Positions 3 to 63,773 of a stretch of DNA of 64,000 bases are shown in pieces; the first letter of the stretch is position 1, and each line of letters starts with the position of its first letter. The position numbers were made by a program, and so were the translations under genes. The stretch lies in IMG/VR virus record IMGVR_UViG_3300044625_001067, positions 186,001-250,000 of that record; one strand, given 5' to 3'. A model generated the notes under the pieces. That model was not told the origin of the DNA. It did not search any database and saw nothing but the letters and a program-made list of their open reading frames with translations.

Positions 3-1307
3 GACGAGCACGTACAAAGTTCGTTCTCAAAGTTAGTTCAAGAGGTTGTATCGAGACCGTGGTACGTTGAGGAATACAGCTCAAAGCCTGGCGATACTGC
101 AGTAAGGGACTTCGTAGCAGAAATCCTCGAAGAACTACCCTTAGATGAGATATATAAGGGACTTGCTGAAGCTCTTATCGTGGGGTTTAGTGTTGGCGAA
201 ATAATGTGGAAGAAATCAAAACGCGGGGTAATACCCTTTGACATTAGAATTAGAGACCAGCGCCGATTTGTTTTCCAAGAAGCGGAAGACTCACAAACAG
301 GCTTCACAATGAGGTGCTTAACCTTCAATCGTATGTTTGAGGGGGTTGAGCTCCCTGCTCGAAAATTCGTCGTAAATCGCTACTGGACTCAGCACAACGG
401 GGACCCATACGGAACTTCGCTAGGGCGAGTTCTTTACCCCCTGGTGAAATTCCGGAGAAGAGCCCTTGAGTCCTACGTTCTCTATGGGGACCGGTATGCG
501 ACACCCACAGCTGTTGCGACCGCACCCCTAAGCGCGTCTTCTGCTGAAATTGACACGATCTATGATCATATCTCAAACTTATCTCAGGAAACTGCGCTTA
601 TTTTGCCGGAAGGGTACAAGCTTGAGTTTGTTAACCCGAGCGGAACTCCGGATGTGTTTAAGGGACTGATTGACTATATCGACAAGGAAATTAGCCTCAT
701 ACTTTGCGGGGAAAACGAGGCTGGGCAAGCTGAGTCTGGATCCAGAGCTTCTTCGCAGGTTGCAAACGTTGTTCGAGTTGTGAAGGCAGCGGAAATTTCC
801 GAAGCGATCTCTCACACTCTGACTCGCACTCTGGTACGATGGATTGTAGACCTTAACTTCGGTGTAGACGTTGCAGCGCCAACCCTCACAAGGGAGTTTC
901 GAATTGAGGAGTCTTCCCTCACTGCCACCGACCTGGGTTCCCTTATCGACAAGGGGTACAAACCGCGTAGGGAGTGGGTTGAGAGGCATTTTCGTATTGA
1001 GCTTGAAGACGAAGCTCCTGAGTTCATGACGAAAGAGGAAGAAGGGAATACCACCTATAGCCCTGACGAGGACGAGGACCTTTACGGATCTATTTTTGGT
1101 GCTGACGGGGAGTACCCCGAAGGAAGTCTGGAGGACGAGCCGGAGGGTGGCGACGAGCCAAAGCCGGAGGAAGAACCATCTGGTGAGCAAACCACGTACA
1201 ACCCTGAAGAAGACGGAAACCTTTACGACTCAGTGTTCGGGAATGACTTAGAACCCGCTGAAGAAGGCGAAAAGAAGGGTAAAAACGTGTATGAGTACAA
1301 CGAGTAG
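3..1307 (+). CDS. Portal protein, Mu gp29/DUF935-like (5'-truncated by window edge)
   Basis: Frame open from base 3 (DEHVQSSFSKLVQEVVSRPW...GFSVGEIMW...PYGTSLGR...LVRWIVDLNFG), motifs typical of DUF935 portals; first gene of head module; acidic C-terminal tail. Confidence 0.85.
   Translation, partial: DEHVQSSFSKLVQEVVSRPWYVEEYSSKPGDTAVRDFVAEILEELPLDEIYKGLAEALIVGFSVGEIMWKKSKRGVIPFDIRIRDQRRFVFQEAEDSQTGFTMRCLTFNRMFEGVELPARKFVVNRYWTQHNGDPYGTSLGRVLYPLVKFRRRALESYVLYGDRYATPTAVATAPLSASSAEIDTIYDHISNLSQETALILPEGYKLEFVNPSGTPDVFKGLIDYIDKEISLILCGENEAGQAESGSRASSQVANVVRVVKAAEISEAISHTLTRTLVRWIVDLNFGVDVAAPTLTREFRIEESSLTATDLGSLIDKGYKPRREWVERHFRIELEDEAPEFMTKEEEGNTTYSPDEDEDLYGSIFGADGEYPEGSLEDEPEGGDEPKPEEEPSGEQTTYNPEEDGNLYDSVFGNDLEPAEEGEKKGKNVYEYNE
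1277..1291 (+). promoter_or_regulatory. GGGTAAAR-N5-YA putative late promoter
   Basis: GGGTAAAAacgtgTA; the final A is the A of the ATG at 1291. Confidence 0.6.
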
Positions 1308-3870: not shown

Positions 3871-3901
3871 TAGCTCCGAGACTTCTGCTCAGAGTGGAAC
3901 T

Positions 3902-5067: not shown

Positions 5068-5075
5068 GGGTAAAA
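5068..5075 (+). promoter_or_regulatory. GGGTAAAR putative late promoter
   Basis: GGGTAAAA in intergenic gap upstream of 5151. Confidence 0.55.
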
Positions 5076-5690: not shown

Positions 5691-5702
5691 CGTGAAAAAG
5701 AA

Positions 5703-5710
5703 GGGTATAA
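5703..5710 (+). promoter_or_regulatory. GGGTATAA variant promoter for major capsid gene
   Basis: Variant of the recurrent motif just after the terminator, 96 nt upstream of capsid ATG. Confidence 0.5.
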
Positions 5711-5798
5711 CTACAGTGACCCCAAAGTTTTAGGACTCGCGGGTCGGATTGCTTCGGCAATCTTTGAAGTCAACTTTACACACAAGGAAACATCTATT

Positions 5799-8700
5799 AT
5801 GATGAATCATAAAGGTTCCACTCAGAGGTGACTCTGATTGAAAATCGGGTGAATTGCTGGGACACCTTAGTTTTGCTTTTGCAAAACAGGCAATCAGCAG
5901 CCAAGGCCCCTAGGGATAGGGGCAAGGTTCAACGACTAGGATAAGTAATCTAGAACAGAAGAAAGTCCCAAGAGCGCCCGACTCTTTGCTCAGGCAAAGA
6001 TGATGATATAGTCTGAACTTTACAGAAATGTAGAGAAGTAAAGGATAAAGAGCCTTTACGATAACAAGTTGCTACAACAGACCTATGCAGGGGTCGATCC
6101 CATTTTTTAGAGTGGCTTTGTTTTAACAAAGAAAATCCGGTGAATTGCTGGGACACCTTAGTTTTGCTTTTGCAAAATAGGCAATCAGCAGCCAAGTTTA
6201 CTTAGGGTCTTTACTAGCTATAGTAGAGTTAGGTAAAAAGGTTCAACGACTAGAAGATGACTGACCCAAGAATAACTCTTCCACGAGCGCCGGGACTCAC
6301 TAGTTACAGACAACTAAACAGATACTTTTTCTTCTTAGAAAAATTCGGTTCCCTCGAAAAGTTTAAATGCTGTCACGAACACCACATCCACCCAACTAAA
6401 ATGGGAGGAAGTGATGCCAAAGTGAACTTAATTTACCTTACACCCAGGGCCCATTACATCGCCCATCAGCTCCTCTTTAGAGCATTTACGGGAAACCAAC
6501 AAGCCCAACGGGCTGCTTGGCTTATGTCCCACACGATTGACGAAGCTTTCGTCAATTCTAGGGTGTATGAGTTTCTAAAAAATAACTACATTTTTTCTGA
6601 AGAGACCCGTAATAAACTTTCTGAAGCAGGTAGGAATAGGAAACTTAGTTTCGAGTCCAGAGAAAAAATCTCTAACTCAAACAAAGAAACCTACAGAAAC
6701 ACCTCTAAAGAAGTTCTACTAGAGAGAATTGAAAGGATGAGGGAGACTAAGAGAGGTACCCCGTGGAATGAGAGTCATAGAAACTCTATCCCCCCTTCTC
6801 TTCCTAGGGGGAGAGATCACTGGAGACTAAAAGATAGTCCATTATGGGGTGTATCCGATGAAATACTCAAAGTATGGCTAGAGAATGGTAAACCATCTTA
6901 TGTTATGCTTTGTAGATTGTTAGGAATCCCCAAAACTAAATCTGTTATGTCTGTAATAAAGAGTATGATATAGTCTGAACTCTTTGGAAACAAGGAGAAG
7001 TAGAGGATAAAGAGCCTTTACGATAACAAATGTCTTACAACCCTTGCACAAGGTTTTATGCTTCCGTCAACAAATATTGCGAATTTTATCGCACCGGTTG
7101 TTGACACTCCTACCAGAGCTGGGAGAATTCTCAGATTTGGGAAGGAACAGTTTGCTATAAACGATTTCCGTCGTGCTTACGGAACTAACATCCCATACGT
7201 CCAAAGCCGCTACGACTCTGAGCCTTATGCTCTAGAGCAGGAAGTGGTCGCCTGGGAATTGCCTGAAGAGGTTGAATCAATAGCCTCCATCAGTTGAGAA
7301 ACTGAAAGAAAAACTGGGTGAATTGCTGGGAAGCCTACGGCTTCAAACGAGAGTTTGAAACTATGGTAATCAGCAGCGAAGCGTTTTCGGGAGAAAACGA
7401 ACGTTCAACGACTAACAGCATACCACTAGAACAGTGATGAAGCTGACAAGAGCGCCTAGCACCCTAACAAGGGTGAAGATATAGTCTGAACTTTCTGGAA
7501 ACAGAAAGAAGTAAAGGATAAAGAGCCTTTACGATAACAGTATTGAATTGAAAACGCTGGCGAGGGTTGTTTGGCTCTTGCTGTGGCAGCTTAACCACAA
7601 ATTAACTGGGTGAATTGCTGGGATCCCTGAATTTCCATTAAAGAAACAGGCAATCAGCAGCCAAGTTTACTACGTCGAGAAGTCACTATGATTTCTGTGG
7701 TGAAAAGGTTCAACGACTAGACGATGAGTTTCGACAACAATAACTCGTCCACGAGCGCCCAGAGCAACATAACGTGCCATTACCGTAACAAATACGAAAA
7801 GTGGTACTGGACTTTAATCAACAAGTTTGAAAATAGAGACTACCTTCCAAAAAAGTTCGAAAATCACCACCCGGTACCAAAAGAGATCTGGCCCAAAGAC
7901 TGGGATAGTCGTGAGATTATAACCACTGTTGGAGTTAGTGTGAGGGAGCACTTCATACTACACCTACTACTAACCAAAGTGGGATTCAGCCACTCTTCCC
8001 TTATCAGATTTCTAAAAGGTTTTCGAAGGGGCCAACAAAGGGGCTTACACGCTACCAACTTAAAAAAGTTGTGGGATCGCTACCAGTTTAAGGGAGACAA
8101 TCTTCCGGATAAACCTTGGGAGCACAGCTACAGGGAAGATTTAAGTTTTCTCGACCTTTGGGTAGACGCTGACTACTTTTATTGGGTGTGGTTGAACATA
8201 CTTCCTACCCCCCTGGGGAAAGGATCCGGCTACCCCGGAAACGGCTATCGAAATCTGTCGAAAGCGGTTGGAGTTAAACCCACAAAGTCGATCAGAAGGA
8301 TGGTAATCTATTTCAAGGCAGGATGGGATCCCTTAAAGGACCCAAGTTGGTTAGATTTCGTTGCTAAGATATAGTCTGAACTTTCTGGAAACAGAAAGAA
8401 GTAAAGGATAAAGAGCCTTTACGATAACAATTTGCCTGCACAAGTAGATCTTCGTGCGATTGAAACAAGGAATGCGATGTCGAGGCTAAACACATTGGCC
8501 CTATGAGCTTAAGCTCATTTAGAAAATTGGGTGAATTGCTGGGAAACCTGACGGTTTCAGGAATGACTTCTCTGAAACACAAGGCAATCAGCAGCCAAGT
8601 TTACTACGTCGAGAAATCGCTATGATTTCTGTGGTGAAAAGGTTCAACGACTAGACGATGAGTTTCGACAACAATAACTCGTCCACGAGCGCCCAACTCT

Positions 8701-9486
8701 TTGCTTAGGCAAAGATGATGATATAGTCTGAGCTTCATGGAAACATGAAGATGTGGGGGATAAAAAGCCTTCACGATAACACAATGAATGAACAGCTACG
8801 AGTACACCGTTGCTCAAGCTGTTTCCGTCACCGCGACTTACAACCCTTACGAGCCCTATAACGGAACCGCAGGTTCCCAGACCGGACTCGGTTTCACAAC
8901 CTGGACAAACTTCAAGACAGCTTACGGCTCCGTTGCTGGAGACGCCGCCTGGTCTGGTGCTACTTCTAACCCAATTGAAGACATCCTAACCCTCAAGCGT
9001 GCAGTCGCCAACCAAATCGGTATCCGTCCAAACTCCGCAGTCGTCGGTACTGCCGTGTTTGACCTCTTGCTGACCAACGAGAAGATCCTTGATCGTATCA
9101 AGTACACATCTGCAGACAGCGTCGACACTGACGTCATTGCTCGCTACTTCGGTCTTGAGCGTGGCCTACGTGTTGCCGAAGGTCGTTACTTAGCGCAAGA
9201 TGGAACCCTACAGCCGGTATTCCCAGCTAACGGTATCCTTCTGTTCTACAGCCCTAACGGTCCTTCTGATTCCATCATGCCTGCTGGTGGTGCGAATGCT
9301 GCGACTCCTGCCTTCTCTTACACATATCAGCTCACAGGCACCCCCGCCGTCCGTCCCGAATACTACATTCGTGAACGTCGCGTTGTGCGTGCTGAAATCA
9401 CAATTGAACGTGTGGTTAACCTGGTTGGCCTCGGCGCAACTGGTCTTATCGGTTCTGGCGCTATGATCACCAACATCCTATCCTGA
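5799..9486 (+). CDS. Major capsid protein, spliced: join(5799-5807,6072-6103,7033-7272,7546-7567,8435-8487,8787-9486), 351 aa
   Basis: Removing five group I introns gives one 1056-nt frame: MMNLQQTYAGVDPILTTLAQGFMLPSTNIANFIAPVVDTPTRAGRILRFGKEQF...LPEEVIENAGEGPAQVDLRAIETRNAMSRLMNSYEY...; VDP.LT.LA.G / FGKE.F pattern of Mu-like capsids; RBS AAGGA upstream. Confidence 0.9.
5808..6071 (+). ncRNA. Group I intron 1 of capsid gene (264 nt, ORF-less)
   Basis: P1 GAAU|...GUUC with U-G; P3 CGGGUG/CGCCCG; GCAATCAGCAG; TTCAACGACTA; GATATAGTC; terminal G 6071. Confidence 0.9.
6104..7032 (+). ncRNA. Group I intron 2 of capsid gene (929 nt, carries HNH ORF)
   Basis: P1 CCAU|...GUGG; P3 CCGGUG/CGCCGG; same core motifs; terminal G 7032. 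Confidence 0.9.
6257..6973 (+). CDS. Intron-encoded HNH homing endonuclease with NUMOD3-like repeats
   Basis: HEHHIHP..MGGSD..NLIYLTPRAHYIAHQLL HNH signature; SEETRNKLSEA / SREKISNS repeats; lies within intron 2. Confidence 0.85.
   Translation: MTDPRITLPRAPGLTSYRQLNRYFFFLEKFGSLEKFKCCHEHHIHPTKMGGSDAKVNLIYLTPRAHYIAHQLLFRAFTGNQQAQRAAWLMSHTIDEAFVNSRVYEFLKNNYIFSEETRNKLSEAGRNRKLSFESREKISNSNKETYRNTSKEVLLERIERMRETKRGTPWNESHRNSIPPSLPRGRDHWRLKDSPLWGVSDEILKVWLENGKPSYVMLCRLLGIPKTKSVMSVIKSMI
7273..7545 (+). ncRNA. Group I intron 3 of capsid gene (273 nt, ORF-less)
   Basis: P1 GAGGU|...GCCUC; P10 UCAAU/AUUGA; P3 CUGGGUG/CGCCUAG; core motifs; terminal G 7545. Confidence 0.9.
7568..8434 (+). ncRNA. Group I intron 4 of capsid gene (867 nt, carries HNH-like ORF)
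   Basis: P1 GAGGGU|...GCUCUU; P3 CUGGGUG/CGCCCAG; core motifs; terminal G 8434. Confidence 0.9.
7724..8374 (+). CDS. Intron-encoded HNH-like homing endonuclease
   Basis: KYEKWYWTLI...ENHHPVPK...VSVREHFILHLLL; C-terminal region resembles that of 6257-6973; within intron 4. Confidence 0.75.
   Translation: MSFDNNNSSTSAQSNITCHYRNKYEKWYWTLINKFENRDYLPKKFENHHPVPKEIWPKDWDSREIITTVGVSVREHFILHLLLTKVGFSHSSLIRFLKGFRRGQQRGLHATNLKKLWDRYQFKGDNLPDKPWEHSYREDLSFLDLWVDADYFYWVWLNILPTPLGKGSGYPGNGYRNLSKAVGVKPTKSIRRMVIYFKAGWDPLKDPSWLDFVAKI
8488..8786 (+). ncRNA. Group I intron 5 of capsid gene (299 nt, ORF-less)
   Basis: P1 GGCU|...GGCC; P10 CAUU/AAUG; P3 UUGGGUG/CGCCCAA; core motifs; terminal G 8786. Confidence 0.9.
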
Positions 9487-9958: not shown

Positions 9959-9970
9959 TTCTCAACTCGA

Positions 9971-10016
9971 AAAGCCCCCTAACCGGGGCTTTTTTTTTTT
10001 TTTTTTTTTTTTTTTT
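9971..10016 (+). terminator. Intrinsic terminator with unusually long T-tract
   Basis: AGCCCC-CTAACC-GGGGCT hairpin then about 27 T. Confidence 0.8.
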
Positions 10017-10028
10017 GTGCCTACAAGA

Positions 10029-10036
10029 GGGTAAAA
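10029..10036 (+). promoter_or_regulatory. GGGTAAAR putative late promoter
   Basis: GGGTAAAA right after terminator, upstream of 10065. Confidence 0.6.
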
Positions 10037-14652: not shown

Positions 14653-16725
14653 ATGACCGACTTAAACCCCTCGTTCAGTATTAGTGACTTTGAGGACTAC
14701 GGTACCACAAACCTTTACCTAACTGCCGAGCAACTTAACTCAGTGGCTCTAACCGAGAGCCGTGTAAACGACCAGCTTGACTGGCTCGCCCAGCTTTTGG
14801 GCTGGAGTGGTCCTGAATACTGGGCCAATCTTGCCTCAACAGTGACCCAAAAGCGAAACCTTTTGACGGGATCCTTCGGTGTGTACGACAGGTACATTCA
14901 CCCAGAAGTTGTCGAAGTTCGCAACTGTAACGGCACAGTAATTATAAAGGCAGACCCAAGGATACAAGTCGGTCAGACCTTTTACTTAGGGGACTTCTCG
15001 TACTTGCTGAAGGAAGTGTCTCAAGCTGGGGCCAACTATGCTCTAACTTTCGAAGGTTTGGGGGGACAGTTCTTCACTGACCTTTCAGAAAATAAGCAGC
15101 TCAAGGTGATGGCCCCTGGCGATTTGCCCAGCCCATTTTTTCGCCCCGAGCCTGGCTCGACCGCTGACGCTTCCTTCCTTTGCGAAGTCCAGGGGTCCGA
15201 CCTTGTCCTGTTCCCGAAGTACAACACAGCGAGGACAATACCTTACAAGTTTAACACATTTTTAGCGGGTGCACGGTACTTTTTCAGCCTCCCTGTAACT
15301 TTCACCACCTCTTCAGTATCAATTGACCCGACCTACGACTTTTCGAGGGAGAGTTGGTACCTTGATATTCCCTCAGATCTTTCCTCTAACGGGTTCGGTC
15401 TCGAAGGGGAGCTAACGTACGAAAGTTCCACCTTGCGAGTGAGGGTATCCCCTTGGTCAAACCCTTCTGACTGGGCCACTCGAGAAAAGATCGATAACTT
15501 TTACGGAGTATGGTCGAACAAAGGTGGAAGGTTGCCCTTTAACTTTGTTTTTGATGCCCTAGGTATCCACGGGTTTAACGAAAAGGTCTCTGTCCATACG
15601 AGCGATGTTGACAAGTACGTAAGTTTTTACGATGTCTTGGCTTACATAGAAAGTGAGAACGGTGGGCCAGTTCCTGACTTCGGGAGCTTTGGCGCAGCTG
15701 TAATTCACTGTGACGGAGAGAGGGTCTTTGAAGGAGTTTCTCACGTCTCAGACAACTTTCAGTTTCTGTACGATATTGACTCCCCGTCTCAAACTTTTCG
15801 CTTTGTTTACACACCCTTGACTTACACAGGATCTGTGGTAGGCCCCGTAATAAGCATATCTGACTCGCTAGCATCGAGCTTCAACTGCAAAATATCCGAC
15901 CTCGTACTCAGTGGCCGCACTCACTACATGTCTCCGAATGTGGAAGATAGCGGGACCCTCTTAAGGCCATGGAAAAGTGAAGCTTTGCAGGTAATTAACT
16001 CTCCGAGCGATCTTGAGCTTCTTCGGAGCCCTAACTCTCTTCGGGCCGACACAAACCACGGGCCTAGTGACTCGAACTGGGAGCGGTACTTTGTGCGCCT
16101 TCCACCTGAGTATGGAAGAAACGATAGTACATGGCAAAAGGTAAACCTTGTGTGCAAGAATTTCGGGTACTGGGGCTCGTCACTCAACCCTGAGAAGATG
16201 TCATGCCCCCCGGAACAGTCGGAGCCACTTGTGTACGAACAAGTGGTTTTGTACGGTGGTGAAAAAGGGTTGATACCGTTTTTGTACTCGGAACCTTACC
16301 TATTCTCAGACATTTTGTACGGCCAAGGGACGTCGGACGACTACGACAATTCGGATATTGCCCCTGGTTTTGACACTCCCTACGACGACTTTGATGAGGC
16401 CGAACTGGTGAGCTACGACCTTCTTCATAATCGCACAGTAAACACATCCTTGCCTGGGGAGACTTACGGTGACTGGGACGGGGAGTACTTACGCTCGTCT
16501 TCCTCTGAGAACTTACGTGGCTTTCTTGTCAACGACCTCAATGAAGAAACACTCGAAGTCGTTCCAGCACCATTGTGGGACGCGAGCATTTATAAGTATC
16601 CGCCAGTCTGCAAAGATGGGGGTGCCTCGTCAACTGTCGACGCGAACCACTACAAAGTGGGGTACTCACTATTTGCAGCCGATCTGTCTGCGTCAGAAGA
16701 AGGCGTTTTCGACTTTGAGACTTGA
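14653..16725 (+). CDS. Putative baseplate/structural protein
   Basis: 690 aa; QLDWLAQLLGW resembles P2 gpI-type wedge motif; operon context. Confidence 0.5.
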   Translation: MTDLNPSFSISDFEDYGTTNLYLTAEQLNSVALTESRVNDQLDWLAQLLGWSGPEYWANLASTVTQKRNLLTGSFGVYDRYIHPEVVEVRNCNGTVIIKADPRIQVGQTFYLGDFSYLLKEVSQAGANYALTFEGLGGQFFTDLSENKQLKVMAPGDLPSPFFRPEPGSTADASFLCEVQGSDLVLFPKYNTARTIPYKFNTFLAGARYFFSLPVTFTTSSVSIDPTYDFSRESWYLDIPSDLSSNGFGLEGELTYESSTLRVRVSPWSNPSDWATREKIDNFYGVWSNKGGRLPFNFVFDALGIHGFNEKVSVHTSDVDKYVSFYDVLAYIESENGGPVPDFGSFGAAVIHCDGERVFEGVSHVSDNFQFLYDIDSPSQTFRFVYTPLTYTGSVVGPVISISDSLASSFNCKISDLVLSGRTHYMSPNVEDSGTLLRPWKSEALQVINSPSDLELLRSPNSLRADTNHGPSDSNWERYFVRLPPEYGRNDSTWQKVNLVCKNFGYWGSSLNPEKMSCPPEQSEPLVYEQVVLYGGEKGLIPFLYSEPYLFSDILYGQGTSDDYDNSDIAPGFDTPYDDFDEAELVSYDLLHNRTVNTSLPGETYGDWDGEYLRSSSSENLRGFLVNDLNEETLEVVPAPLWDASIYKYPPVCKDGGASSTVDANHYKVGYSLFAADLSASEEGVFDFET

Positions 16726-16755
16726 CGGGTAAAAACTCTTAGCTACCTAACTGAA

Positions 16756-18997: not shown

Positions 18998-19075
18998 CTA
19001 CCTAGACCTGGTCCGCAGAGGGTAAAATAAAAAGATGGGGTGAAAACACTCCCTGAAATTTTCACAACATCAGAC

Positions 19076-19725: not shown

Positions 19726-19740
19726 GGGTAAAACCTTGTA
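19726..19740 (+). promoter_or_regulatory. GGGTAAAR-N5-YA putative late promoter
   Basis: GGGTAAAAccttgTA upstream of 19756. Confidence 0.6.
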
Positions 19741-20847: not shown

Positions 20848-22071
20848 ATGGAACTGAATACAATAACGAAAATAGAGCAATTCCTCTGCGACTCTCTTAT
20901 TGCCTCCCCCCTCATACCAATTGGGGTTAATGTATTGCGTTTGGCTGACGCGGTTGAGAATGAGGGCGTTGTAACTCAGACGAACAACATTGTTGTGCGC
21001 TACGAAAGCTCAACAAGCAATGTTAAGAACCGAGTGCCTTTCATATACGAAGACACTCTCAATTTTGAGCTTAACTTTTCGTGCCAAAACTACCTGACGA
21101 GTTCCGGACACGACTTTGCTACGCAACTCCTTATGGGTGCGAAAATCACACTGTCGGGGAGTGCCCCTTCAGGTGCTTACGTGCAAGTTTTGGAACCTTT
21201 TCGATGCTCTACGTCCCAGTTCACAGGCTTAAGCCCGGAGTCTCAGTACACCTACACTCAAAGCTGGTCCGTAACTATAGAGGAAACCCTGCCGTATATA
21301 GCACTCGACCCCTGTGTTCAACGTGGTGATTGCCGCCAAATTTTCCCCACTCGAAATGTCCTAACTTCTTTACCTTTGGCTGGTGTTCTTGATGAAGCAA
21401 CGGGGAGTGTGTATGTGCCATGGTACCCTGAGACGAATCCCCTAGAGGCCGCGTTCACAGACGCACTCGGAGTGCAGTGGAGCGAAGAACTTACGCAGTC
21501 AGGGGATTGGGTCTATGTATGCAGCCCGAGTGAGGTATTCCTCGAAGACCCTCTAAATCAGCCAATCTACTTATTAAGCAATAAGAATTTCACGGCGGAC
21601 GGTCGCTTGGTTGTAACAATTTGGAACGCCACAACAAAGCAGCCCATAAAGGAAGTTTTCTACGTTAACTCCGGGAAAAGGCTTGCTCGTTACGCTGTGG
21701 ATCTTTGGAGGAACACGGTTTCTGGCGCAGCCAAGGGAGGAATAGACCCGCTAAGTGTGAAGGATGCGTCGTGGTCGTCGAGACTCACCTACGGAGAGTT
21801 CGCAATTGTGAGAGGGGCGAACCGAACCCTGTACTCAGACCCCCTAGATCCGAACGGCAAGACGCAAACTTTGATGGGTGGAACACTCGTCGGTGTGAAA
21901 CCTGACACGTTTATTCAAACACCGCAGGGACGGTTCTACTTTGTAGCTCAGTCTCCGCAGGGTAAAGGTTGGTTGATACAAGATTCCTTCGAGCTTGCGT
22001 CGATTAATTCCTTGTGGAAGCTCGGCTGCATTCCTTGCGAAGGCGGGCCAAATCCTCCGAGTCTCTGTTAA
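20848..22071 (+). CDS. Putative tail completion/neck protein with C-terminal extension
   Basis: Follows gp36-like gene; N-terminal ITKIEQFL...IVVRYESS resembles Mu gp37-like proteins. Confidence 0.45.
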   Translation: MELNTITKIEQFLCDSLIASPLIPIGVNVLRLADAVENEGVVTQTNNIVVRYESSTSNVKNRVPFIYEDTLNFELNFSCQNYLTSSGHDFATQLLMGAKITLSGSAPSGAYVQVLEPFRCSTSQFTGLSPESQYTYTQSWSVTIEETLPYIALDPCVQRGDCRQIFPTRNVLTSLPLAGVLDEATGSVYVPWYPETNPLEAAFTDALGVQWSEELTQSGDWVYVCSPSEVFLEDPLNQPIYLLSNKNFTADGRLVVTIWNATTKQPIKEVFYVNSGKRLARYAVDLWRNTVSGAAKGGIDPLSVKDASWSSRLTYGEFAIVRGANRTLYSDPLDPNGKTQTLMGGTLVGVKPDTFIQTPQGRFYFVAQSPQGKGWLIQDSFELASINSLWKLGCIPCEGGPNPPSLC

Positions 22072-26010: not shown

Positions 26011-26185
26011 GTTGAACGCCACACTTCAGTCAAAAAAAAAGGGGGGGGCCAGCGGGTAAAGTCACTCGTAGGGTTTCCCTTTCACAATAAACTCTACCAT
26101 TCGTTTCGAAAGGGGGAAGGATTATGTAGTCCTGGTTATCAACGAAGAATACACGCTATCCACTGTTGTCAAATCCCCTTATACC

Positions 26186-26944: not shown

Positions 26945-26969
26945 AGGGGCCGAAAGGCCCCTCTTTTTT
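26945..26969 (+). terminator. Intrinsic terminator
   Basis: AGGGGCC-GAAA-GGCCCCT then CTTTTTT. Confidence 0.85.
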
Positions 26970-27059
26970 CGGGGCAGGGTGGGGTAAAATTCATCATAGC
27001 CAGTAAAACAATAGCACCGTGATTTGTGCCCCCCCAAAGCCCAGCCTTGAGGCAAAACC

Positions 27060-27763: not shown

Positions 27764-27804
27764 GGTAAGCGGAGGGTAAAGTTTAGCAGTCCACAAACCA
27801 TACA

Positions 27805-28422: not shown

Positions 28423-29103
28423 GTGGGTAACCCTAGGAAAAAATGCACAGCAGGAAAGTCTTGCTCGGCAACTTGCATAAGCAAGGGGTTTAAATGCAAG
28501 AAAAAGTTGCCGTCACCAGTTAGCGACAGTCTCACACGTAACAGTGAGAAGTTGTTGCACCTTGGTGAGCATGTTGGGGCCAACGTGACGTCTTGGAAAG
28601 TTGGGAAAGTTGTTGGCCCCCTGGTATCAAAGTACCTGGAAACTCGCTACGGCATACCACCGGAAACCACAGAAAAGCTGTCGGAAACTATTGTTCAAGC
28701 GGTGGTTGCCACGGGACTTCACTCTCGACATTTAAGGTCGAGTGAGGACTTTGTAAGAGACCTACTCACAGAAGCTTCTGCCGCGTTCCTGGGGAAAAGT
28801 GCCCACACAGGTGTGGAAAGTTTCCTAACCCACCAGGAAAGTCGCGAGATTGTCCAACAAGCTTTGCCCCTACTTGCAGGAAAGTTCACCGGAATTGGTG
28901 CAGCTTTTGCAGGGTCAAAACTTCCCAAAGTGGCCCAAATTTCGGGCGCCATATCACGAAAGTACAACTCCGACCTTTTGAAGCTACAGAGGCTATTCAG
29001 AAGATCTGAAGCTTCATTTTCTGAGCAAACCAACCAGGTAACCTCAGCTAAGCTTCTCGGAGACCTTTCTCTTCTCTCGGTTTTACTGTCCTTGAACGGG
29101 TAA
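28423..29103 (+). CDS. Hypothetical protein with N-terminal CxxGKSCxxTCIxxxxxC motif
   Basis: KKCTAGKSCSATCISKGFKC shared with kinase at 33641. Confidence 0.6.
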   Translation: MGNPRKKCTAGKSCSATCISKGFKCKKKLPSPVSDSLTRNSEKLLHLGEHVGANVTSWKVGKVVGPLVSKYLETRYGIPPETTEKLSETIVQAVVATGLHSRHLRSSEDFVRDLLTEASAAFLGKSAHTGVESFLTHQESREIVQQALPLLAGKFTGIGAAFAGSKLPKVAQISGAISRKYNSDLLKLQRLFRRSEASFSEQTNQVTSAKLLGDLSLLSVLLSLNG

Positions 29104-29447: not shown

Positions 29448-29526
29448 CGTTCCCGTGGGGAAGTAAACCCTGGAGTCCGTTTCTGAGCGAAAAGAGGGTA
29501 AAGTTAAGTATCAACGTAAGACCCCT

Positions 29527-30695: not shown

Positions 30696-30728
30696 GGGGT
30701 AAAGTTAGGTAGTTAACCACTTACAGAA

Positions 30729-31455: not shown

Positions 31456-31581
31456 GTTAAACTAAAGAATTCTCCCTGGACATATGGGGAATGTAACTTC
31501 TGTAGAGGTGAGACCTAATGCGACAAAATACCTCAAACCATGTGATGTGACGGGGTAAAACAACTTAGTTGAGCCACGGGA

Positions 31582-32082: not shown

Positions 32083-32145
32083 GACAACAGTAGTGAAGGG
32101 TAAAGTTATGTACAACAAGAATCTCTTTTCTCAAGAAGGGAACCC

Positions 32146-35082: not shown

Positions 35083-35090
35083 GGGTAAAA
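35083..35090 (+). promoter_or_regulatory. GGGTAAAR putative late promoter
   Basis: GGGTAAAA upstream of 35131. Confidence 0.55.
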
Positions 35091-39906: not shown

Positions 39907-39921
39907 GGGTAAAACTGCTTA
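39907..39921 (+). promoter_or_regulatory. GGGTAAAR-N5-YA putative late promoter
   Basis: GGGTAAAActgctTA upstream of 39941. Confidence 0.6.
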
Positions 39922-43581: not shown

Positions 43582-43902
43582 ATGAAAAAAGGAAACCACT
43601 GCCCACTTATTCGAAAAGACTGCATTGAAAATAAATGTGCTTGGTACTGCCAAGCGAGAGGTGTGAACCCGAACACTGGTCTTGAGGTATCTGAGTGGCA
43701 ATGTGCTGTGAACCTCCTCCCGGTTCTTTTAATCGAAAATTCGTATCAGCAGAGGCAAACCTCCGCGTCTGTCCAAAGTTTCCGAAATGAATCAGTGGAA
43801 AGATCGGACTTACTGAATACGATTCTACTGCAAGCTTCTCAGGGGCACTCACGCAGAGACTCAATCCAGCCTGTGGACCTGAAAGAGCTTTCACCAGGGT
43901 AA
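43582..43902 (+). CDS. Cys-rich hypothetical protein associated with tail fibre
   Basis: CPLIRKDC...CAW...W.CA; follows fibre gene. Confidence 0.6.
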   Translation: MKKGNHCPLIRKDCIENKCAWYCQARGVNPNTGLEVSEWQCAVNLLPVLLIENSYQQRQTSASVQSFRNESVERSDLLNTILLQASQGHSRRDSIQPVDLKELSPG

Positions 43903-43924
43903 AGTCCCTTAGCACCTTAACGAA

Positions 43925-46961: not shown

Positions 46962-47023
46962 CTTCGCCCCCGGCTCTTAAAGGGTATAACCTACAATAAG
47001 AGTCGAAAATCCCCAAGGGCCGT

Positions 47024-47765: not shown

Positions 47766-48524
47766 TTAAAAGTCAAGTGAAAGATCCTCTGTGTCACACT
47801 TGGAGAAAGACCCAAGAATATCCTCAGAAGTCTCATAGCCCTCGCACCCCTTTGACCGATTAGCTGAGGAGCATACCAGAGAGAAATTAGCCTTTGCAAG
47901 GTGATATCTCTTCCATTCTTCCCACAGGGCTTTATCCTTGAACTCCTTTGCCGTAGGTGGGCCCACCAGAAAAATGTCTACGTAAGTTAACGAGTTTAGT
48001 TTAACGAACGAATCGGCAATTTCAGCAAAAGACAGACCTACATGGTCTACGTCAGTCCTCATTCCCCGTCTTAGGTTCTTTCCCGTCAGATAGCAAGTTG
48101 CCGGAAGACACACAGAGTCCCGAAAGTCCTTCAGCTGTTGAGAAACCCCGCTCCTCATGGCCGCCTTCACAGAATTAAAGTGTTTCTCCTCTGAGCTTGC
48201 GCTTGTCGCGATTTTCTTCGGAGGGTACAAAAAGTCTATAAGTTTCTTCTTGGGCACGGGTTGTTGAGAGCCACCTCTTTCGAGGCTTAGCATTTTCACT
48301 CTCATGCCGCCAGCGATATCAACATTCCTAAGGTAGAGCTTAACTTCAGGGTCTGTAGACAACTTTCCCCAAGTAGGTGTGACTCGGCACGACCTTAAAA
48401 CAAACTCCTTCGGTTCACCAATAAGCTGGGAGTTTACTCGGTGGTTCTCTATAATTCTACTTAGTTTGTCTGTGTAGTCTTTTTTGGTTAGTCCGAATGT
48501 TTGTTTGCCGAGAGTGTTGCTCAT
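47766..48524 (-). CDS. Putative HNH-like nuclease (possible DUF3223-like N-terminus)
   Basis: CYLTG....DVDH...VCSSANRSK beta-beta-alpha-like pattern; own GGGTAAAG motif on minus strand; ends LSLDF. Confidence 0.55.
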   Translation of the reverse strand: MSNTLGKQTFGLTKKDYTDKLSRIIENHRVNSQLIGEPKEFVLRSCRVTPTWGKLSTDPEVKLYLRNVDIAGGMRVKMLSLERGGSQQPVPKKKLIDFLYPPKKIATSASSEEKHFNSVKAAMRSGVSQQLKDFRDSVCLPATCYLTGKNLRRGMRTDVDHVGLSFAEIADSFVKLNSLTYVDIFLVGPPTAKEFKDKALWEEWKRYHLAKANFSLVCSSANRSKGCEGYETSEDILGSFSKCDTEDLSLDF

Positions 48525-48538: not shown

Positions 48539-48553
48539 TGAGAAACTTTACCC
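48539..48553 (-). promoter_or_regulatory. GGGTAAAR-N5-YA putative promoter (minus strand)
   Basis: Reverse complement GGGTAAAGtttctCA, ending 14 nt before ATG at 48524. Confidence 0.65.
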
Positions 48554-52282: not shown

Positions 52283-52324
52283 GGTGGTAAAACGGGTAAA
52301 ACTAGGGAGAATGATTGTGCCGGG

Positions 52325-54523: not shown

Positions 54524-54538
54524 GGGTAAAGTCTATTA
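54524..54538 (+). promoter_or_regulatory. GGGTAAAR-N5-YA putative late promoter
   Basis: GGGTAAAGtctatTA upstream of tape measure gene. Confidence 0.6.
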
Positions 54539-59640: not shown

Positions 59641-59654
59641 GGGGCAACACGGGA

Positions 59655-60712: not shown

Positions 60713-60751
60713 TCAACAATTTAAGTCTCTGAGTTAAACTCTTGGGACAAC

Positions 60752-60780
60752 AAGACCCTGGCTTACCGCTGGGGTCTTTT
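60752..60780 (+). terminator. Intrinsic terminator overlapping next promoter
   Basis: AAGACCCTGGC-TTACC-GCTGGGGTCTT-TT. Confidence 0.65.
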
Positions 60781-60819
60781 GCTATACTACACCGTCAAAC
60801 CTAAACAACAAGAGGATAC

Positions 60820-63773
60820 ATGGCAGATCCCTTTTCCGGGGGACTCGGAAGTACGAAACAAGAGATTGGAATACTAACCGAAGCGAAAGAGAGAAACAAG
60901 GCAGCGTCCTTCCGGTCGAAGAAAGACGGAGAGGAAAAACAAGAGAAGAAAAAGAGAGCACCCACAAAAGTGTCCGAGCTTTACAACTCAGGCGTCACTC
61001 TGCTGAAGGCGAAGGGGTTCGTTATTGAGATCGACGAGTCCGGTGACCACTGTAAGCACCGTATTCTGAAGCCCACGCCACCGGTAATGGTAAGGGGAAT
61101 TCAGTACCCGGCAGACTTCAACCCCTTGCAGGATATCTCAGTTTACGACGACTTTGAAAAAGTCGAGTCATGCTTCCATCCTGACTTGTGTCCAGACGAC
61201 GTAAGAACTTTCTGGGAACCTTTATTCAAACCGAAAGCCGGTGACTCAGATCTCGTCTCTTTCACAGAGCGGCTGCTGAAGATGAAGAGAATAAACATGA
61301 GCAAGAGCATTCATGAAACGCTAAGTTACGGCCATACATTTGACCCTGCGGCTCGGTGGGGTGGAGTTCCTGTCTCTAATCCAAGGTCGTGGGTACCAGA
61401 CAGAGACTGGTTCAACCCTGTTCTGCAACTGGTTACCCTAGCTGACGTTTTCTCTATCTTTCCTGAGGCAGAGCGGGAAATGCTCAGGTTGATTATTGGG
61501 CGAATCGGGGTAGGCAGGTCAAATCACTTGCCACCGGGAAAGGACCAGCCTGTAGATCACACTGCTCGTATGGCGGGGGTGATTGTGGGTAAGGATGCTG
61601 GATTAGGAAAGTCGACTCTCTTCAATGGAATGACCGCAGCTTTTTCCAAGTGCGGTTTTGTAACCCACACGTTTAAATCGACTGAGGATCGCTTCGGCCT
61701 TAAAGCTGCTGCTCTTAGTGACATAGCATACAAGGATGATACCTCCTTGGCTTCTCTCAAGAAGTTCCTTGCTTCTGAGGAGACCAAGATTTTGATCACG
61801 AATGGGCTTTTCCAAGTAGAAGAAAAGTTCGAGAAGGCCGAGCAAATTTGGCCAAAGACAGTCATATTGGTTAACTCCAATGACTGGAACAGTAAGTTTG
61901 CCTACGACTTAGATCCGGGGATTGACGCACTAGTCCCCCTGCCCGGTAACGGACAGTAAAAAACGCATTCTAAACGGGGGAACCCCTTGGCGGGTAAAAT
62001 CTGTAAAACAAGGGCAATCCCGTGCTAAGTGGAATTTATCGAATCTTTTGTACGTCAAATGGTAAGTCATACACTGGATCCTCAATAAACATTGACTCTC
62101 GGTGGGGTAAGCACATATACTTACTTCGCAAAGACTGTCATTCTAATGTTCACCTTCAAAACTGCTTCAACAAGTACGGTAGAGAATCTCTAGAGTTCAG
62201 CTTGCTTGAAGACCTTAGCGGTCTACCCCTGGACGAGATCCGGGAGGTTGAGCAGAAATACTTGGACTCCCTGGACTGGAGTGAAGCACTAAACATATGC
62301 AAAGACTCCAGGGGTGGGCAGATAACAGAGGAAGCTAATGAGAGACGAAGGGAGTCTCTAAGGGACTATTACAAAACTAACCCCGATGCTTTGCGGGGGG
62401 GAGAATAATCCCTTCTATGGCAAAAAACACAGTCAAAGTACAAAAGACAGCATATCCAGAGCTAATAGCGGCAAGATGAGGTCAGACGAGTTTAAGAGAC
62501 AGAAATCTGAGTTTATGTCTAACCGCAAGGGCGTACACCATAGCGAAGAACACAAAAGTAAACTAAAGGACAAGTTTACCGGCGGCGGTAATCCTAATGC
62601 CATAGAGACCGTCATCAACGGTGTAGTGTACCCTACAAAACGTGAAGCCCTGAGAGCTTTGGGCCTGAGATATGACTATCAACTTGATAAACACCTAAAA
62701 GCCGAACGACTATCCCGAGAGGGAGTAGAGTCAAGTGACTCGAAACGAATGCCCCCTGTGTAAGCAGGGAGAAGATATAGTCTGCTCTGAATGGTAACAT
62801 TCAGCTGGGTTAGTCCCGGAAAAAGTCTAACGATCTTTTTTGAACATTTGGTATTGATCGCATTAAGCTCATTAGTACATATAGGGAGTATGAGGTAACA
62901 AAAAACATCGAGAACACGAAAGGGACAGTGTCAGAGGGGTCTCCCGACCTTCGCCCACGAGCACACATTCCTTACCTCTCTAATAAGCTAGGTGTGAGTG
63001 CTGATGCGTTGTATCTTTGGTGTCTCCGCCTCGCTACCGATAGGTTCTGGGAAATCATTAACGATGTAGCTGATCCCCGCATCAATCGCCTTCAGGTTGA
63101 AGTGCGCTATTGGACCACACGACAAAGGATCCGATTCAAAGCCGATGTCACACAGGCACTCGTTAATGCCATGGCGTTCGCTCACTCGGTTCGAACGGGG
63201 TCAGACCTTAGCTTCATGCCCGAGCTGACGCCGGATGTTCTCTACGAGTATCTCAGTTCTCTTTACTTTGTGGGAGTGGACCCGTCGTGCCAACACTTAA
63301 CTGCGAGCATGAAAAAAGAGTGGGAGAACGCAGGGCGTCCGTCGACACATTACTACCAAGGTTTCCGAGAGCTAAGGTGGGAATCTGTGAGAAAGGCAAT
63401 TTCCCTCGCACGAGAGTTTCTGTTCGACGAAACGACGGGTCAGCGGCAAGAGACCAAGGACAAAACAGCTCTGACGCTAATTCGAGAGATAATGGAAAAG
63501 CTGGTGATGAGGGATGGTTTTAAGATTGGTGGCGAGGCGAACTACGTCATTGAAAACTGGAACAATTGTCGTCACGCTCAAGAGGAACTTGTTTTGGAAG
63601 GGGAAAAGCTAGTTGAATCCATGGAAGACATGGACAAACAAAGACTACTCAACCCTAAGACAAATTGCTGTGACGATTGGCTTCTTGACAAGAACTACTC
63701 ACCCGATGTTGCTGAAAGGTTCCGAGAATCCGCACGTAAAAAACTCTACGAGGTTAAAGGGGTAAAAGTATGA
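60820..63773 (+). CDS. SF3/D5-like helicase, spliced: join(60820-61922,62852-63773), 674 aa
   Basis: Walker A GKDAGLGKST, Walker B IAYKDD, motif C ILVNSN; splicing restores LDPGIIDRIKLIS (Arg finger region) in frame with ORF 62928-63773. Confidence 0.8.
61992..61999 (+). promoter_or_regulatory. GGGTAAAR motif inside intron upstream of GIY-YIG gene
   Basis: GGGTAAAA in the P5 region, 30 nt before GTG at 62022. Confidence 0.5.
62022..62763 (+). pseudogene. Intron-encoded GIY-YIG homing endonuclease with NUMOD3 repeats, frameshifted at G7 run 62395-62401
   Basis: SGIYRI...YTGSS..I..RW..H; second ORF GENNPFYGKKHS; removing one G fuses both (LRGENNPFYG). Confidence 0.8.

What the first reader, a model, noticed from the sequence alone, without database searches (positions are those of the whole stretch)
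1277..61999. Recurrent GGGTAAAR(-N5-YA) promoter-like motif before more than 20 genes
Seen at 1277, 5068, 10029, 16727, 19020, 19726, 26054, 26982, 27774, 29098, 29496, 30697, 31553, 32098, 35083, 39907, 43897, 52294, 54524, 61992, on the minus strand at 48546-48553 before the only minus-strand gene, and as GGGTATAA at 5703 and 46982. Sites lie at gene boundaries, often just after terminators. About half have YA exactly 5 nt downstream, like a start site. About 4 GGGTAAAR hits are expected by chance over both strands at equal base frequencies. Established: it resembles the -10/-12 elements of group 3 sigma factors (B. subtilis SigB GGGTAT; cyanobacterial SigF GGGT-type). Inference: a late regulon read by a phage-encoded or co-opted SigF-like sigma, with no -35 element that I could see.
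Basis: partly seen in the sequence, partly recalled or inferred. Interest (0 to 1): 0.7.

Follow-up and report, generated by a model that had tools for sequence, protein, structure and literature searches.

The report
Late-gene promoter motif of a cyanophage
An eight-base signal, GGGTAAAR, sits about 30 bases in front of most virion genes of this 277-kb lake cyanophage and its relatives. It is most likely the promoter read by a sigma factor that the phage itself encodes, which makes it a clean but fairly ordinary case of phage late-gene control.

Summary
GGGTAAAR occurs 24 times in the window (5.95 expected), 22 of them on the gene strand. In the phage's structural region, 30 of 37 copies lie 10-90 nt before a start codon (p about 1e-23), most often 28-32 nt before it. 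Half the window sites carry YA exactly 5 nt downstream. No -35 element is detectable, even with 125 pooled sites.

The motif keeps its position before orthologous genes in Synechococcus phage S-CBWM1 and in about 24 metagenomic relatives, while the flanking sequence diverges. It is not enriched in two other sigma-bearing cyanophages.

The genome (a psbA-carrying cyanophage with no RNA polymerase genes found) encodes two sigma factors just 3' of the window. Sigma-2 is closest to the SigB/SigF/FliA group, whose promoters carry GGGTAT or GGGTAAG at -10/-12. It has sigma2 and sigma3 domains but no recognisable region 4.2 helix-turn-helix, which fits promoters without a -35. Sigma-1 (RpoS-like sigma2 plus sigma4) fits a second, sigma70-like promoter class of about 70 copies that covers the other half of the genome.

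Transcript starts are not mapped. Ends of metatranscriptome contigs give only weak support. I rate it a new member of a known kind (phage sigma plus late promoter).

The parts
1277..1284 (+). GGGTAAAA, 14 nt before ATG 1291 (Mu gpI-like prohead protease, 859 aa), inside the 3' end of the portal gene. The predicted start A would be the A of the ATG (possibly leaderless).
   Evidence: S-CBWM1 ortholog also has the motif
5068..5075 (+). GGGTAAAA, 83 nt before ATG 5151 (157-aa ORF)
   Evidence: motif also upstream of the S-CBWM1 ortholog
5703..5710 (+). Variant GGGTATAA after a terminator hairpin, about 90 nt before the ATG (~5797) of the intron-split major capsid gene
10029..10036 (+). GGGTAAAA, 36 nt before ATG 10065. 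It follows terminator 9969-9994 and a 27-T run.
   Evidence: conserved in S-CBWM1
16727..16734 (+). GGGTAAAA, 29 nt before ATG 16756, directly after the stop of ORF 14653-16725
19020..19027 (+). GGGTAAAA, 20 nt before GTG 19040 (56 nt before ATG 19076). Found only in close relatives.
19726..19733 (+). GGGTAAAA, 30 nt before ATG 19756 (Mu gp36-like domain protein). Found only in close relatives.
21960..21967 (+). GGGTAAAG inside ORF 20848-22071, 111 nt from its stop and upstream of the small ORFs that precede the large terminase gene. Possible internal promoter; status uncertain.
   Evidence: present at the same place in 6 relatives, but coding constraint could explain that
26054..26061 (+). 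GGGTAAAG, 132 nt before ATG 26186, in a non-coding gap
26982..26989 (+). GGGTAAAA, 78 nt before ATG 27060, 20 nt after strong terminator 26945-26962
   Evidence: A strain variant in RNA run X19 keeps the 8-mer while the flanks differ (table 7). Two RNA contigs start 26-27 nt downstream.
27774..27781 (+). GGGTAAAG, 31 nt before ATG 27805
   Evidence: present 32-39 nt before the ortholog in 8 of 10 relatives, down to 45% protein identity
29098..29105 (+). GGGTAAAA, 29 nt before ATG 29127. Its TAA is the stop codon of ORF 28423-29103.
29496..29503 (+). GGGTAAAG, 31 nt before ATG 29527. This is the best-conserved site.
   Evidence: motif 31-35 nt before the ortholog in all 9 relatives that have the gene; RNA contigs from 4 runs begin at 29508-29525
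30697..30704 (+). GGGTAAAG, 32 nt before ATG 30729
   Evidence: one RNA contig starts at 30728
31553..31560 (+). GGGTAAAA, 29 nt before ATG 31582
32098..32105 (+). GGGTAAAG, 48 nt before ATG 32146
35083..35090 (+). GGGTAAAA, 48 nt before ATG 35131 (1590-aa tail fibre protein)
39907..39914 (+). GGGTAAAA just after the stop of the first tail-fibre gene, 34 nt before GTG 39941 (1207-aa tail fibre)
   Evidence: S-CBWM1 ortholog has it at a similar distance
43897..43904 (+). GGGTAAAG, 28 nt before ATG 43925. Its TAA is the stop of ORF 43582-43902.
46982..46989 (+). Variant GGGTATAA, 42 nt before ATG 47024
   Evidence: orthologs in S-CBWM1 and L025 carry GGGTAAAA
48546..48553 (-). GGGTAAAG on the minus strand, 29 nt before the ATG (48524) of the only minus-strand gene (47766-48524)
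   Evidence: A gene that cannot be co-transcribed with its neighbours has its own copy at the canonical distance.
52294..52301 (+). GGGTAAAA, 31 nt before ATG 52325
54524..54531 (+). GGGTAAAG, 46 nt before ATG 54570 (tape-measure-like, 1159 aa)
61992..61999 (+). GGGTAAAA, 30 nt before GTG 62022, just after the primase-like gene 60820-61959
63760..63767 (+). GGGTAAAA, 10 nt before ATG 63770, inside the last codons of ORF 62928-63773. Doubtful as a promoter because the leader would be too short.
432..439 (-). GGGTAAAG antisense inside the portal gene. Probably a chance copy.

Best explanation
GGGTAAAR is the core (-10-like) element of the promoters that drive the virion and other late genes of this cyanophage lineage.

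By analogy with SigB, GGG would lie at about -15 to -13 and TAAA from -12. Transcription would start at the conserved purine (the A of YA) 7-8 nt after the 8-mer. That gives leaders of only about 15-18 nt on most genes.

The phage has no RNA polymerase of its own, so the host core enzyme must be redirected. The most likely reader is phage sigma-2 (genome 258714-259442, 9 kb 3' of the window), a divergent SigB/SigF/FliA-like factor. It has sigma2 and sigma3 domains and a short acidic C-terminal stub without a recognisable 4.2 helix-turn-helix, which would explain why these promoters need no -35.

Early genes use about 70 copies of a different, sigma70-like promoter (TTGTTT-N17-TATAGT with a conserved upstream GGCGGTTTCCCGCC). 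This class would be read by host SigA, possibly reinforced by phage sigma-1, which is RpoS-like with sigma2 plus sigma4.

Shown here: the motif statistics, its placement, its strand bias, its conservation, the absence of a -35, and the sigma genes with their domain make-up. Inferred: start sites, timing, and which sigma reads which class.
For: Enrichment and placement:
- 24 hits against 5.95 expected.
- 30 of 37 hits lie in the 10% of sequence just upstream of start codons, p 1.6e-23.
- An unbiased 7-mer scan of all upstream regions ranks GGGTAAA second; the first is the early-promoter word CGGTATA.
- The lone minus-strand gene has its own correctly oriented copy at 29 nt.

Conservation:
- S-CBWM1 has 43 plus-strand against 6 minus-strand copies.
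- All 24 IMG/VR relatives are strongly strand-biased.
- Whole related records show 38/6, 32/4, 25/6 and 18/2.
- The motif keeps its position before orthologs at 35-70% protein identity while the flanks diverge.
- It is not enriched in S-CBS2 or MaAM05.

Promoter architecture:
- No -35 signal.
- YA at N5 in 14 of 27 sites, p 2e-7.
- Sigma70-type promoter hits in the window are at chance.

- Two Sigma70_r2 genes in the genome.
- No match to either of two core domains tested, one each of the RNAP beta and beta' subunits.
- Sigma-2's best family hits are SigF, SigBFG and FliA. Its best solved relative is S. aureus SigB, 8x6g_H, E 9e-10.
- The SigB residues that contact -15G and -14G (R110, R100) align with R117 and R107, which are invariant across 22 phage orthologs.
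- The C-terminus has no Pfam region-4 match even at E 10. It ends where other sigmas continue into the 4.2 HTH. The AF2 model shows only three helices there.
- Sigma-1 matches RpoS in sigma2 and sigma4 and has an early-class promoter.

Literature: the Synechocystis SigF -12 core is GGGTAAG (PMC2532724).

RNA: true left ends of metatranscriptome contigs fall within +5 to +35 of a motif 8 times in 52 (1.9 expected). They fall once in the mirror window upstream.
Against: - No transcription start site is mapped. The only RNA data are low-depth Logan contigs from related strains. Half of the supporting contig ends are at one site, and deeper contigs (X19, X22) run straight through several motifs.
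- Sigma-2 scores about 45 bits against curated cut-offs of 190-261 bits, so it is no bona fide SigF, SigB or FliA.
- The G-contacting residues are also present in the FliA-like sigma of Microcystis phage MaAM05, whose genome lacks the motif. They do not prove specificity.
- The tight 28-32 nt spacing to the start codon is unusual for promoters and would also suit an RNA-level signal.
- Seven of 37 plus-strand copies in the late region lie outside the 10-90 nt zone before a start codon, four of them deep inside genes.
- Expression timing is inferred from gene content only.
Confidence: 0.6

Rival explanations
1. The motif is a promoter, but it is read by the host's own group-3 sigma (SigF) holoenzyme, which the phage co-opts. 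The phage sigmas would do something else.
For: The 8-mer is almost identical to the -12 core of the Synechocystis SigF-dependent pilA1 promoter, GGGTAAG (PMC2532724). Sigma-2's specificity residues are not unique to this lineage.
Against: SigF promoters as characterised need a -32 TAGGC and an upstream AG-rich stretch. Neither is present here. Motif enrichment tracks the phage lineage that carries sigma-2 orthologs and is absent from other cyanophages. The host is unknown, so whether it has a SigF was not tested.
Confidence: 0.12
2. The motif is a promoter read by phage sigma-1 (204 aa, sigma2 plus sigma4) rather than sigma-2.
For: Sigma-1 is made from an early-class promoter (genome 252189), as expected for a factor that switches on the next class. 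Its family hits also include SigB/F/G and sporulation sigmas over region 2.
Against: Sigma-1 has an RpoS-like region 4 (the ARRFGLLG-type segment), so a -35 element would be expected. None exists at these sites. It lacks a sigma3 domain, which in SigB co-reads the GGG. Its best solved relatives are RpoS and SigA, not SigB.
Confidence: 0.12
3. The motif acts in RNA, not DNA: a processing site or translation-initiation aid within long polycistronic late transcripts.
For: Narrow spacing to the start codon (mode 28-32 nt). The genes lack obvious Shine-Dalgarno sequences (read directly from the sequences). Deep RNA contigs read through several sites.
Against: Early genes of the same phage are translated by the same ribosomes and lack the motif. 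The distance to the start codon still ranges from 10 to 132 nt. The motif matches a known sigma -10 element, and a matching sigma is encoded. The minus-strand gene, which needs its own promoter, has one copy and no other promoter-like signal. Contig starts lie downstream of the motif, not at it.
Confidence: 0.08
4. A compositional or chance artefact, for example a frequent Gly-stop codon pair at gene ends.
For: The TAA of the motif is the upstream gene's stop codon at 4 sites in this genome and at many sites in S-CBWM1.
Against: 25 of 37 sites are fully intergenic. No shuffle reaches 24 hits. The reversed-pattern control gives 15 plus-strand and 7 minus-strand hits against 42 and 16 for the motif. 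The position is conserved across diverged relatives.
Confidence: 0.01

Closest known systems
SigB-type promoters of Firmicutes (GTTTAA-N12-15-GGGTAT) and the S. aureus SigB open complex (PDB 8x6g; PMC11156646)
   Same: The GGGTA core. In SigB, sigma2 and sigma3 together read GGG at -15 to -13 as double-stranded DNA and flip out -11A. Phage sigma-2's best solved relative is this SigB, and the two arginines that touch -15G and -14G are conserved.
   Different: No -35 GTTT element here. The motif continues as AAAR rather than T. R97 is His and F79 is Lys in the phage protein. The phage sigma lacks a recognisable region 4.2.
Cyanobacterial group-3 SigF promoters (Synechocystis PpilA1-54: TAGGC at -32, GGGTAAG/GGTAA at -12; PMC2532724)
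   Same: A nearly identical -12 word in a cyanobacterial setting. The NCBIfam model NF005644 (annotated 'RNA polymerase sigma factor SigF') is sigma-2's top hit.
   Different: The SigF promoter needs the -32 element and the -39 to -37 region; the phage sites have neither. Sigma-2 scores 45.7 bits against a cut-off of 261.
T4-type late promoters (TATAAATA at -10, no -35, read by gp55 with gp33 and the sliding clamp) - from my own knowledge and the review PMC2988020 listed
   Same: A phage late promoter made of a single 8-bp -10-region element with no -35, read by a phage sigma that lacks a -35-binding domain.
   Different: Different word and a different, non-orthologous sigma. No gp55, gp33 or clamp dependence was shown or tested here. 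This phage is not T4-like (Mu-like protease, gp36 and baseplate J).
Sigma cascades of Bacillus phage SPO1 (gp28, then gp33/34) - from my own knowledge
   Same: Two phage-encoded sigma70-family proteins and distinct promoter classes for successive gene sets.
   Different: SPO1 promoters have both -35 and -10 elements. The order of action of the two cyanophage sigmas is not known.

Membership tests
Group-3 sigma (SigB/SigF/SigG/FliA) dependent promoter | -10/-12 element of the GGGTAT or GGGTAA type | tested here: met
   GGGTAAAR is invariant at the sites; the literature cores are GGGTAAG and GGGTAT at -15 to -10
Group-3 sigma (SigB/SigF/SigG/FliA) dependent promoter | A matching -35/-32 element (GTTTAA or TAGGC) at fixed spacing | tested here: not met
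   Information content is 0.21 bit or less at every position from -45 to -4. No 4- to 6-mer in -42 to -10 survives multiple-test correction in 125 pooled sites.
Group-3 sigma (SigB/SigF/SigG/FliA) dependent promoter | Primary transcript start about 7-9 nt downstream of the element | tested here: inconclusive
   Only Logan contigs of lake metatranscriptomes were available. 8 of 52 contig left ends lie within +5 to +35 (1.9 expected), and half of them are at one site.
SigF / SigB-F-G / FliA-WhiG protein families (NCBIfam NF005644, TIGR02980, TIGR02479) | Score above the curated family cut-off | tested here: not met
   Sigma-2 scores 45.7, 44.8 and 43.3 bits against cut-offs of 261, 234 and 190
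SigF / SigB-F-G / FliA-WhiG protein families (NCBIfam NF005644, TIGR02980, TIGR02479) | Three-domain architecture: sigma2, sigma3, and sigma4 with a 4.2 helix-turn-helix | tested here: not met
   Sigma2 and sigma3 are present. The C-terminal 58 aa have no Sigma70_r4 hit at E 10 or below, a net charge of about -6, three predicted helices, and end before the HTH of aligned sigmas.
SigF / SigB-F-G / FliA-WhiG protein families (NCBIfam NF005644, TIGR02980, TIGR02479) | Residues that read the G-rich upstream part of the -10 (S. aureus SigB R110, R100, R97) | tested here: met
   They align with R117, R107 and H104, all invariant in 22 orthologs. They are not specific, because MaAM05 FliA also has them.
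T4-type late transcription (gp55/gp33/gp45) | TATAAATA element and a gp55-family sigma | tested here: not met
   The word is different. The phage's sigma genes are Sigma70_r2 proteins closest to SigB and RpoS. gp55, gp33 and clamp homologs were not searched for specifically.
Single-subunit (T7-like) or multisubunit phage RNA polymerase promoters | A phage-encoded RNA polymerase | tested here: not met
   No match to a core domain of the RNAP beta subunit (PF00562) or of beta' (PF00623) in the 98%-complete genome, with positive controls in 14 of 14 genomes. The T7-type search also found nothing, but its control was uninformative.

The most novel reading that the evidence does not exclude
A widespread clade of freshwater and estuarine cyanophages (S-CBWM1-like, 139-280 kb) runs a three-tier programme with two home-made sigmas. 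One of them is a SigB/SigF-derived factor that has lost the region 4.2 DNA-reading helix. It fires -35-less GGGTAAAR promoters through sigma2 and sigma3 alone. This would be a solution convergent with T4 gp55, reached from an ordinary group-3 sigma, and it might need a still unknown co-factor at the beta flap.
Probability: 0.35. Interest if true: 0.6.

Novelty: new member of a known kind. Interest (0 to 1): 0.5.

Why it matters
The motif gives a ready-made transcription map for an abundant but unstudied cyanophage lineage. Sigma-2 homologs form more than 600 protein clusters in metagenomes.

The map predicts about 40 late promoters per genome and a separate set of about 70 early promoters. The sigma/promoter pair can be tested directly in the culturable relative S-CBWM1.

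A compact 8-bp promoter without a -35, paired with a small dedicated sigma, could also serve as an orthogonal expression switch in cyanobacteria.

Conceptually it is one more example of a known strategy: a phage sigma redirecting the host polymerase to late genes.

Tried and rejected
- Nucleotide search of the window against 50,697 phage records: no match.
- RNA evidence: both run searches returned only Logan contigs, with no raw reads. Laying 8 metatranscriptomes gave no 'many molecules begin here' signal and only a weak contig-end enrichment. It is therefore not decisive.
- Third promoter class for sigma-1 or middle genes: the word CYTAAAC looked enriched upstream of genes lacking the other two motifs. 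Genome-wide it occurs 104 times against about 69 expected, with only 17 copies near starts. I dropped it.
- -35 search: neither a position matrix nor a gapped k-mer test found one.
- Other sigma-bearing cyanophages (S-CBS2, MaAM05): no motif enrichment, so the motif is not a general property of cyanophage sigmas.
- Specificity residues: they are conserved, but also present in MaAM05 FliA, so I downgraded this to 'compatible'.
- Literature: searches for the 8-mer with phage promoters, for cyanophage late promoters and sigma factors, for S-CBWM1 and for Aokuangvirus found no description of this motif. The original S-CBWM1 genome paper is not in the library, so prior mention there cannot be excluded.
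- Complex prediction was not used. It gives no verdict for protein-DNA pairs.

Full report
WHAT THE WINDOW IS

The window is bases 186001-250000 of a 277,244-bp virus record (49.8% G+C, CheckV 98% complete) assembled from a lake-water metagenome. It encodes the following:
- a portal;
- a Mu gpI-like protease;
- a major capsid protein;
- a tail-tube-like protein;
- baseplate J;
- a Mu gp36-like protein;
- the large terminase;
- two giant tail-fibre proteins;
- a tape-measure-like protein.

The genome carries psbA. Next to the sigma genes lie ORFs that I read from their translations as MazG-like and SpeD-like; these were not profile-tested.

The nearest isolate is Synechococcus phage S-CBWM1 (Aokuangvirus, 139 kb), with 60% identity in TerL and 52% in the second sigma factor. 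The window therefore comes from a jumbo cyanophage, and all but one of its genes lie on the plus strand.

CHECKING THE OBSERVATION

GGGTAAAR occurs 24 times, against 5.95 +/- 2.44 in dinucleotide shuffles (shuffle maximum 12), and 22 of the 24 are on the plus strand.

I called genes crudely over the whole genome. In the structural region (157-270 kb), 30 of 37 plus-strand copies lie 10-90 nt upstream of a start codon. That zone holds 10.4% of the sequence (p 1.6e-23). The commonest distance is 28-32 nt. Twenty-five copies are fully intergenic although 92% of the region is coding, and in four copies the motif's TAA is the stop codon of the upstream gene.

An unbiased scan of 7-mers in the 60 nt before every gene ranks GGGTAAA second in the whole genome. 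The single minus-strand gene (47766-48524) has its own copy in the right orientation, 29 nt from its ATG.

YA lies exactly 5 nt after the 8-mer in 14 of 27 sites, against an 11% background (p 2e-7). The claim of frequent preceding terminators is overstated. Only 5703, 10029 and 26982 follow convincing terminators, and terminator-like hits as a whole are at chance.

ANATOMY OF THE MOTIF

A position matrix of the 37 late-region sites shows:
- no information (0.21 bit or less) anywhere from -45 to -4 relative to the first G;
- a purine at -3;
- A at -1 (T nearly absent);
- the invariant GGGTAAA;
- R at position 8 (A 27, G 10);
- pyrimidines at the next two positions;
- T-A at positions +13/+14, counting the first G as 0.

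I pooled 125 non-identical sites from this genome, S-CBWM1 and seven metagenomic relatives. No 4- to 6-mer in the -42 to -10 interval survives multiple-test correction. The best is GTTTT, 12 against 3.5 expected (raw p 2e-4 over 1024 tests). So there is no detectable -35 element.

Canonical sigma70-type promoter matches in the window are at chance level (12 against 12.9, and 12 against 14.1).

CONSERVATION

- S-CBWM1 has 43 GGGTAAA on its gene strand and 6 on the other, again just upstream of genes and often sharing the TAA with the upstream stop codon.
- Twenty-four IMG/VR loci found with the terminase (66-98% identity) carry 2-13 copies each on the gene strand and 0-1 on the other.
- Five whole related records give 38/6, 32/4, 14/4, 25/6 and 18/2, well above a reversed-word control in four of the five; in the third the control (11) is close to the motif count (14).

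The position is also conserved. The gene at 29527 has the motif 31-35 nt upstream in all nine relatives that carry it. The gene at 27805 has it in eight of ten. Orthologs of the protease, tail-fibre, tape-measure and other genes in S-CBWM1 (31-55% protein identity) have it too, while the surrounding non-coding sequence is unalignable. Some sites are lineage-specific, so there is turnover.

Two other cyanophages with group-3-like sigma genes show no enrichment: S-CBS2 (3/1 against a control of 2/0) and Microcystis phage MaAM05 (22/21 against 19/22).

WHO READS IT

The genome matched neither of the two core domains tested, PF00562 of the RNA polymerase beta subunit and PF00623 of beta' (both controls were positive). 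It has no T7-type polymerase hit either, although that control was uninformative. It has two Sigma70_r2 genes just beyond the window, at positions syntenic with the two annotated sigma genes of S-CBWM1.

Sigma-2 (242 aa, directly after the intein-containing ribonucleotide reductase gene):
- Its best family hits are SigF (NF005644), SigB/F/G and FliA/WhiG, covering regions 2 and 3. All are far below the curated cut-offs.
- A profile of 22 orthologs finds S. aureus SigB (8x6g_H) as the best solved relative (E 9e-10).
- In that structure SigB reads GGG at -15 to -13 as duplex DNA with R110, R100 and R97, and flips -11A into a pocket formed by F79 and F86 (PMC11156646). In the phage family these positions are R117, R107 and H104 (all invariant), F/Y93 and a variable Lys.
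- This is compatible with SigB-like reading of GGGTA. However, the same three residues occur in MaAM05's FliA-like sigma, so they do not prove specificity.
- The AlphaFold model (pLDDT 71) shows sigma2 (31-109), sigma3 (117-157), a disordered linker and a confident three-helix C-terminal stub (190-235).
- That stub has no Sigma70_r4 match even at E 10 and is net acidic. In a multiple alignment it stops where sigma-1 and MaAM05 FliA continue into the 4.2 helix-turn-helix.
- A sigma without a -35-reading helix matches promoters without a -35.

Sigma-1 (204 aa) instead resembles RpoS/SigA in sigma2 and in region 4. It is preceded by an early-class promoter.

THE OTHER PROMOTER CLASS

The top upstream word, CGGTATA, belongs to a 45-nt element that reads GGGCGGTTTCCCGSCTTGTTTCTGC-N4-GCAGAAACGGTATAGT. 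This is TTGTTT-N17-TATAGT with a small palindrome upstream and a hairpin in the spacer.

About 70 copies follow the local gene strand from 4 to 170 kb, plus copies at 252 kb (before sigma-1) and 268 kb. None lies in the window.

The two classes divide the genome between them. That is the main support for calling the GGGTAAAR set 'late', together with the virion functions of the genes it serves. Timing itself was not measured.

RNA DATA

Only assembled contigs of lake metatranscriptomes, from 90-97% identical strains, were available. The region is represented in RNA libraries, and the deepest contigs run through several motif sites.

Among 52 true contig left ends, 8 lie 5-35 nt downstream of a motif (1.9 expected, p about 7e-4), and 1 lies in the mirror window upstream. 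Four of the 8 are at site 29496, where contigs from four runs begin at 29508-29525.

A strain variant keeps the 8-mer at 26982 while both flanks differ (table 7). This evidence is suggestive only.

MECHANISM I THINK MOST LIKELY

1. Host core polymerase with host SigA fires the early class. Sigma-1 may also contribute.
2. Sigma-2 accumulates.
3. Sigma-2 holoenzyme binds GGGTAAAR through sigma2 and sigma3.
4. It opens the DNA at the first A after the T.
5. It starts 7-8 nt after the 8-mer, at the conserved A or the following purine, without any -35 contact.
6. The resulting mRNAs have leaders of about 15-18 nt.

In S-CBWM1 a GGGTAAAG copy lies 68 nt before the RNR-sigma-2 operon. That would allow positive autoregulation, as described for Synechocystis SigF.

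I put about 0.8 on 'promoter element' and about 0.6 on the full statement including sigma-2. The rivals are host SigF, sigma-1, an RNA-level signal, and chance.

COMPARISON WITH KNOWN SYSTEMS, AND NOVELTY

It works like a group-3 sigma promoter reduced to its -10 part. Functionally it resembles T4 late promoters: one 8-bp element, no -35, and a sigma lacking a -35-binding domain.

It is not a member of the SigF, SigB or FliA families by curated score, and it fails the -35 and region-4.2 criteria. I found no description of this motif in the searchable literature, but the original S-CBWM1 paper was not available.

I rate it a new member of a known kind, with interest about 0.5.

Noticed in passing
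window 5700-9486: The major capsid gene appears to be split by five group I introns (Rfam hits 5794-6035, 6094-6303, 7263-7508, 7540-8398, 8478-8750). Two of them carry homing-endonuclease ORFs (6257-6973, 7724-8374). Exons inferred by homology to the S-CBWM1 capsid protein: ATG ~5797, ~6063-6107, 7031-7273, a 21-nt micro-exon 7547-7567, 8435-8494 and 8794-9486. Five introns in one phage structural gene is unusual.
   Followed up: partly
genome 4-170 kb, 252189 and 268373 (outside the window; G000 coordinates): About 70 copies of a 45-nt sigma70-like promoter, GGGCGGTTTCCCGSCTTGTTTCTGC-N4-GCAGAAACGGTATAGT, each oriented with the downstream gene. It has a terminator-like palindrome upstream of the -35 and a hairpin inside the spacer. 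This is probably the early or middle promoter class. The GGGTAAACCGCCC hits on the opposite strand are its reverse complement, not copies of the late motif.
   Followed up: partly
L001:1423-2037 and L002:1318-2046 (genome 252206-252820 and 258714-259442): Two phage sigma factor genes lie 2-9 kb beyond the window's 3' end, syntenic with the two in S-CBWM1. Sigma-2 homologs form more than 600 clusters in metagenomes, on contigs up to 280 kb.
   Followed up: yes
L002:42-1367 (genome ~257.4-258.8 kb): The ORF upstream of sigma-2 has a conserved ribonucleotide reductase alpha-subunit C-terminal part preceded by an intein-like end (VHNC). This matches the intein annotated in the S-CBWM1 ortholog.
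   Followed up: no
window 9969-10028: A strong terminator hairpin is followed by an uninterrupted run of 27 T, just before the motif at 10029. The run may be an assembly-prone homopolymer or an unusually long U-tract.
   Followed up: no
window 1277-1293: The motif lies only 14 nt before the protease ATG, so the predicted start A coincides with the A of the ATG. This is a candidate leaderless mRNA.
   Followed up: no
genome 265669-265711 and 266624-266665: Two near-identical upstream cassettes precede two paralogous genes. Each has GGGTAAACCGCCC followed about 35 nt later by GGGTAAAAT. This looks like a tandem duplication that includes its promoter region.
   Followed up: no
S-CBWM1 (L004-L006), e.g. 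record positions 26630, 65855, 126606, 132300, 135680: S-CBWM1 has its own repeated upstream element (TGTGAAAGATT-N6-8-CTGTCCCA), often directly before a GGGTAAAA copy. It differs from the early-class promoter of the window's genome. It may be that phage's early or middle promoter, or a regulator site.
   Followed up: no
genome 272210-273082: A photosystem II D1 (psbA) gene, uninterrupted here, whereas the S-CBWM1 psbA carries two group I introns.
   Followed up: no
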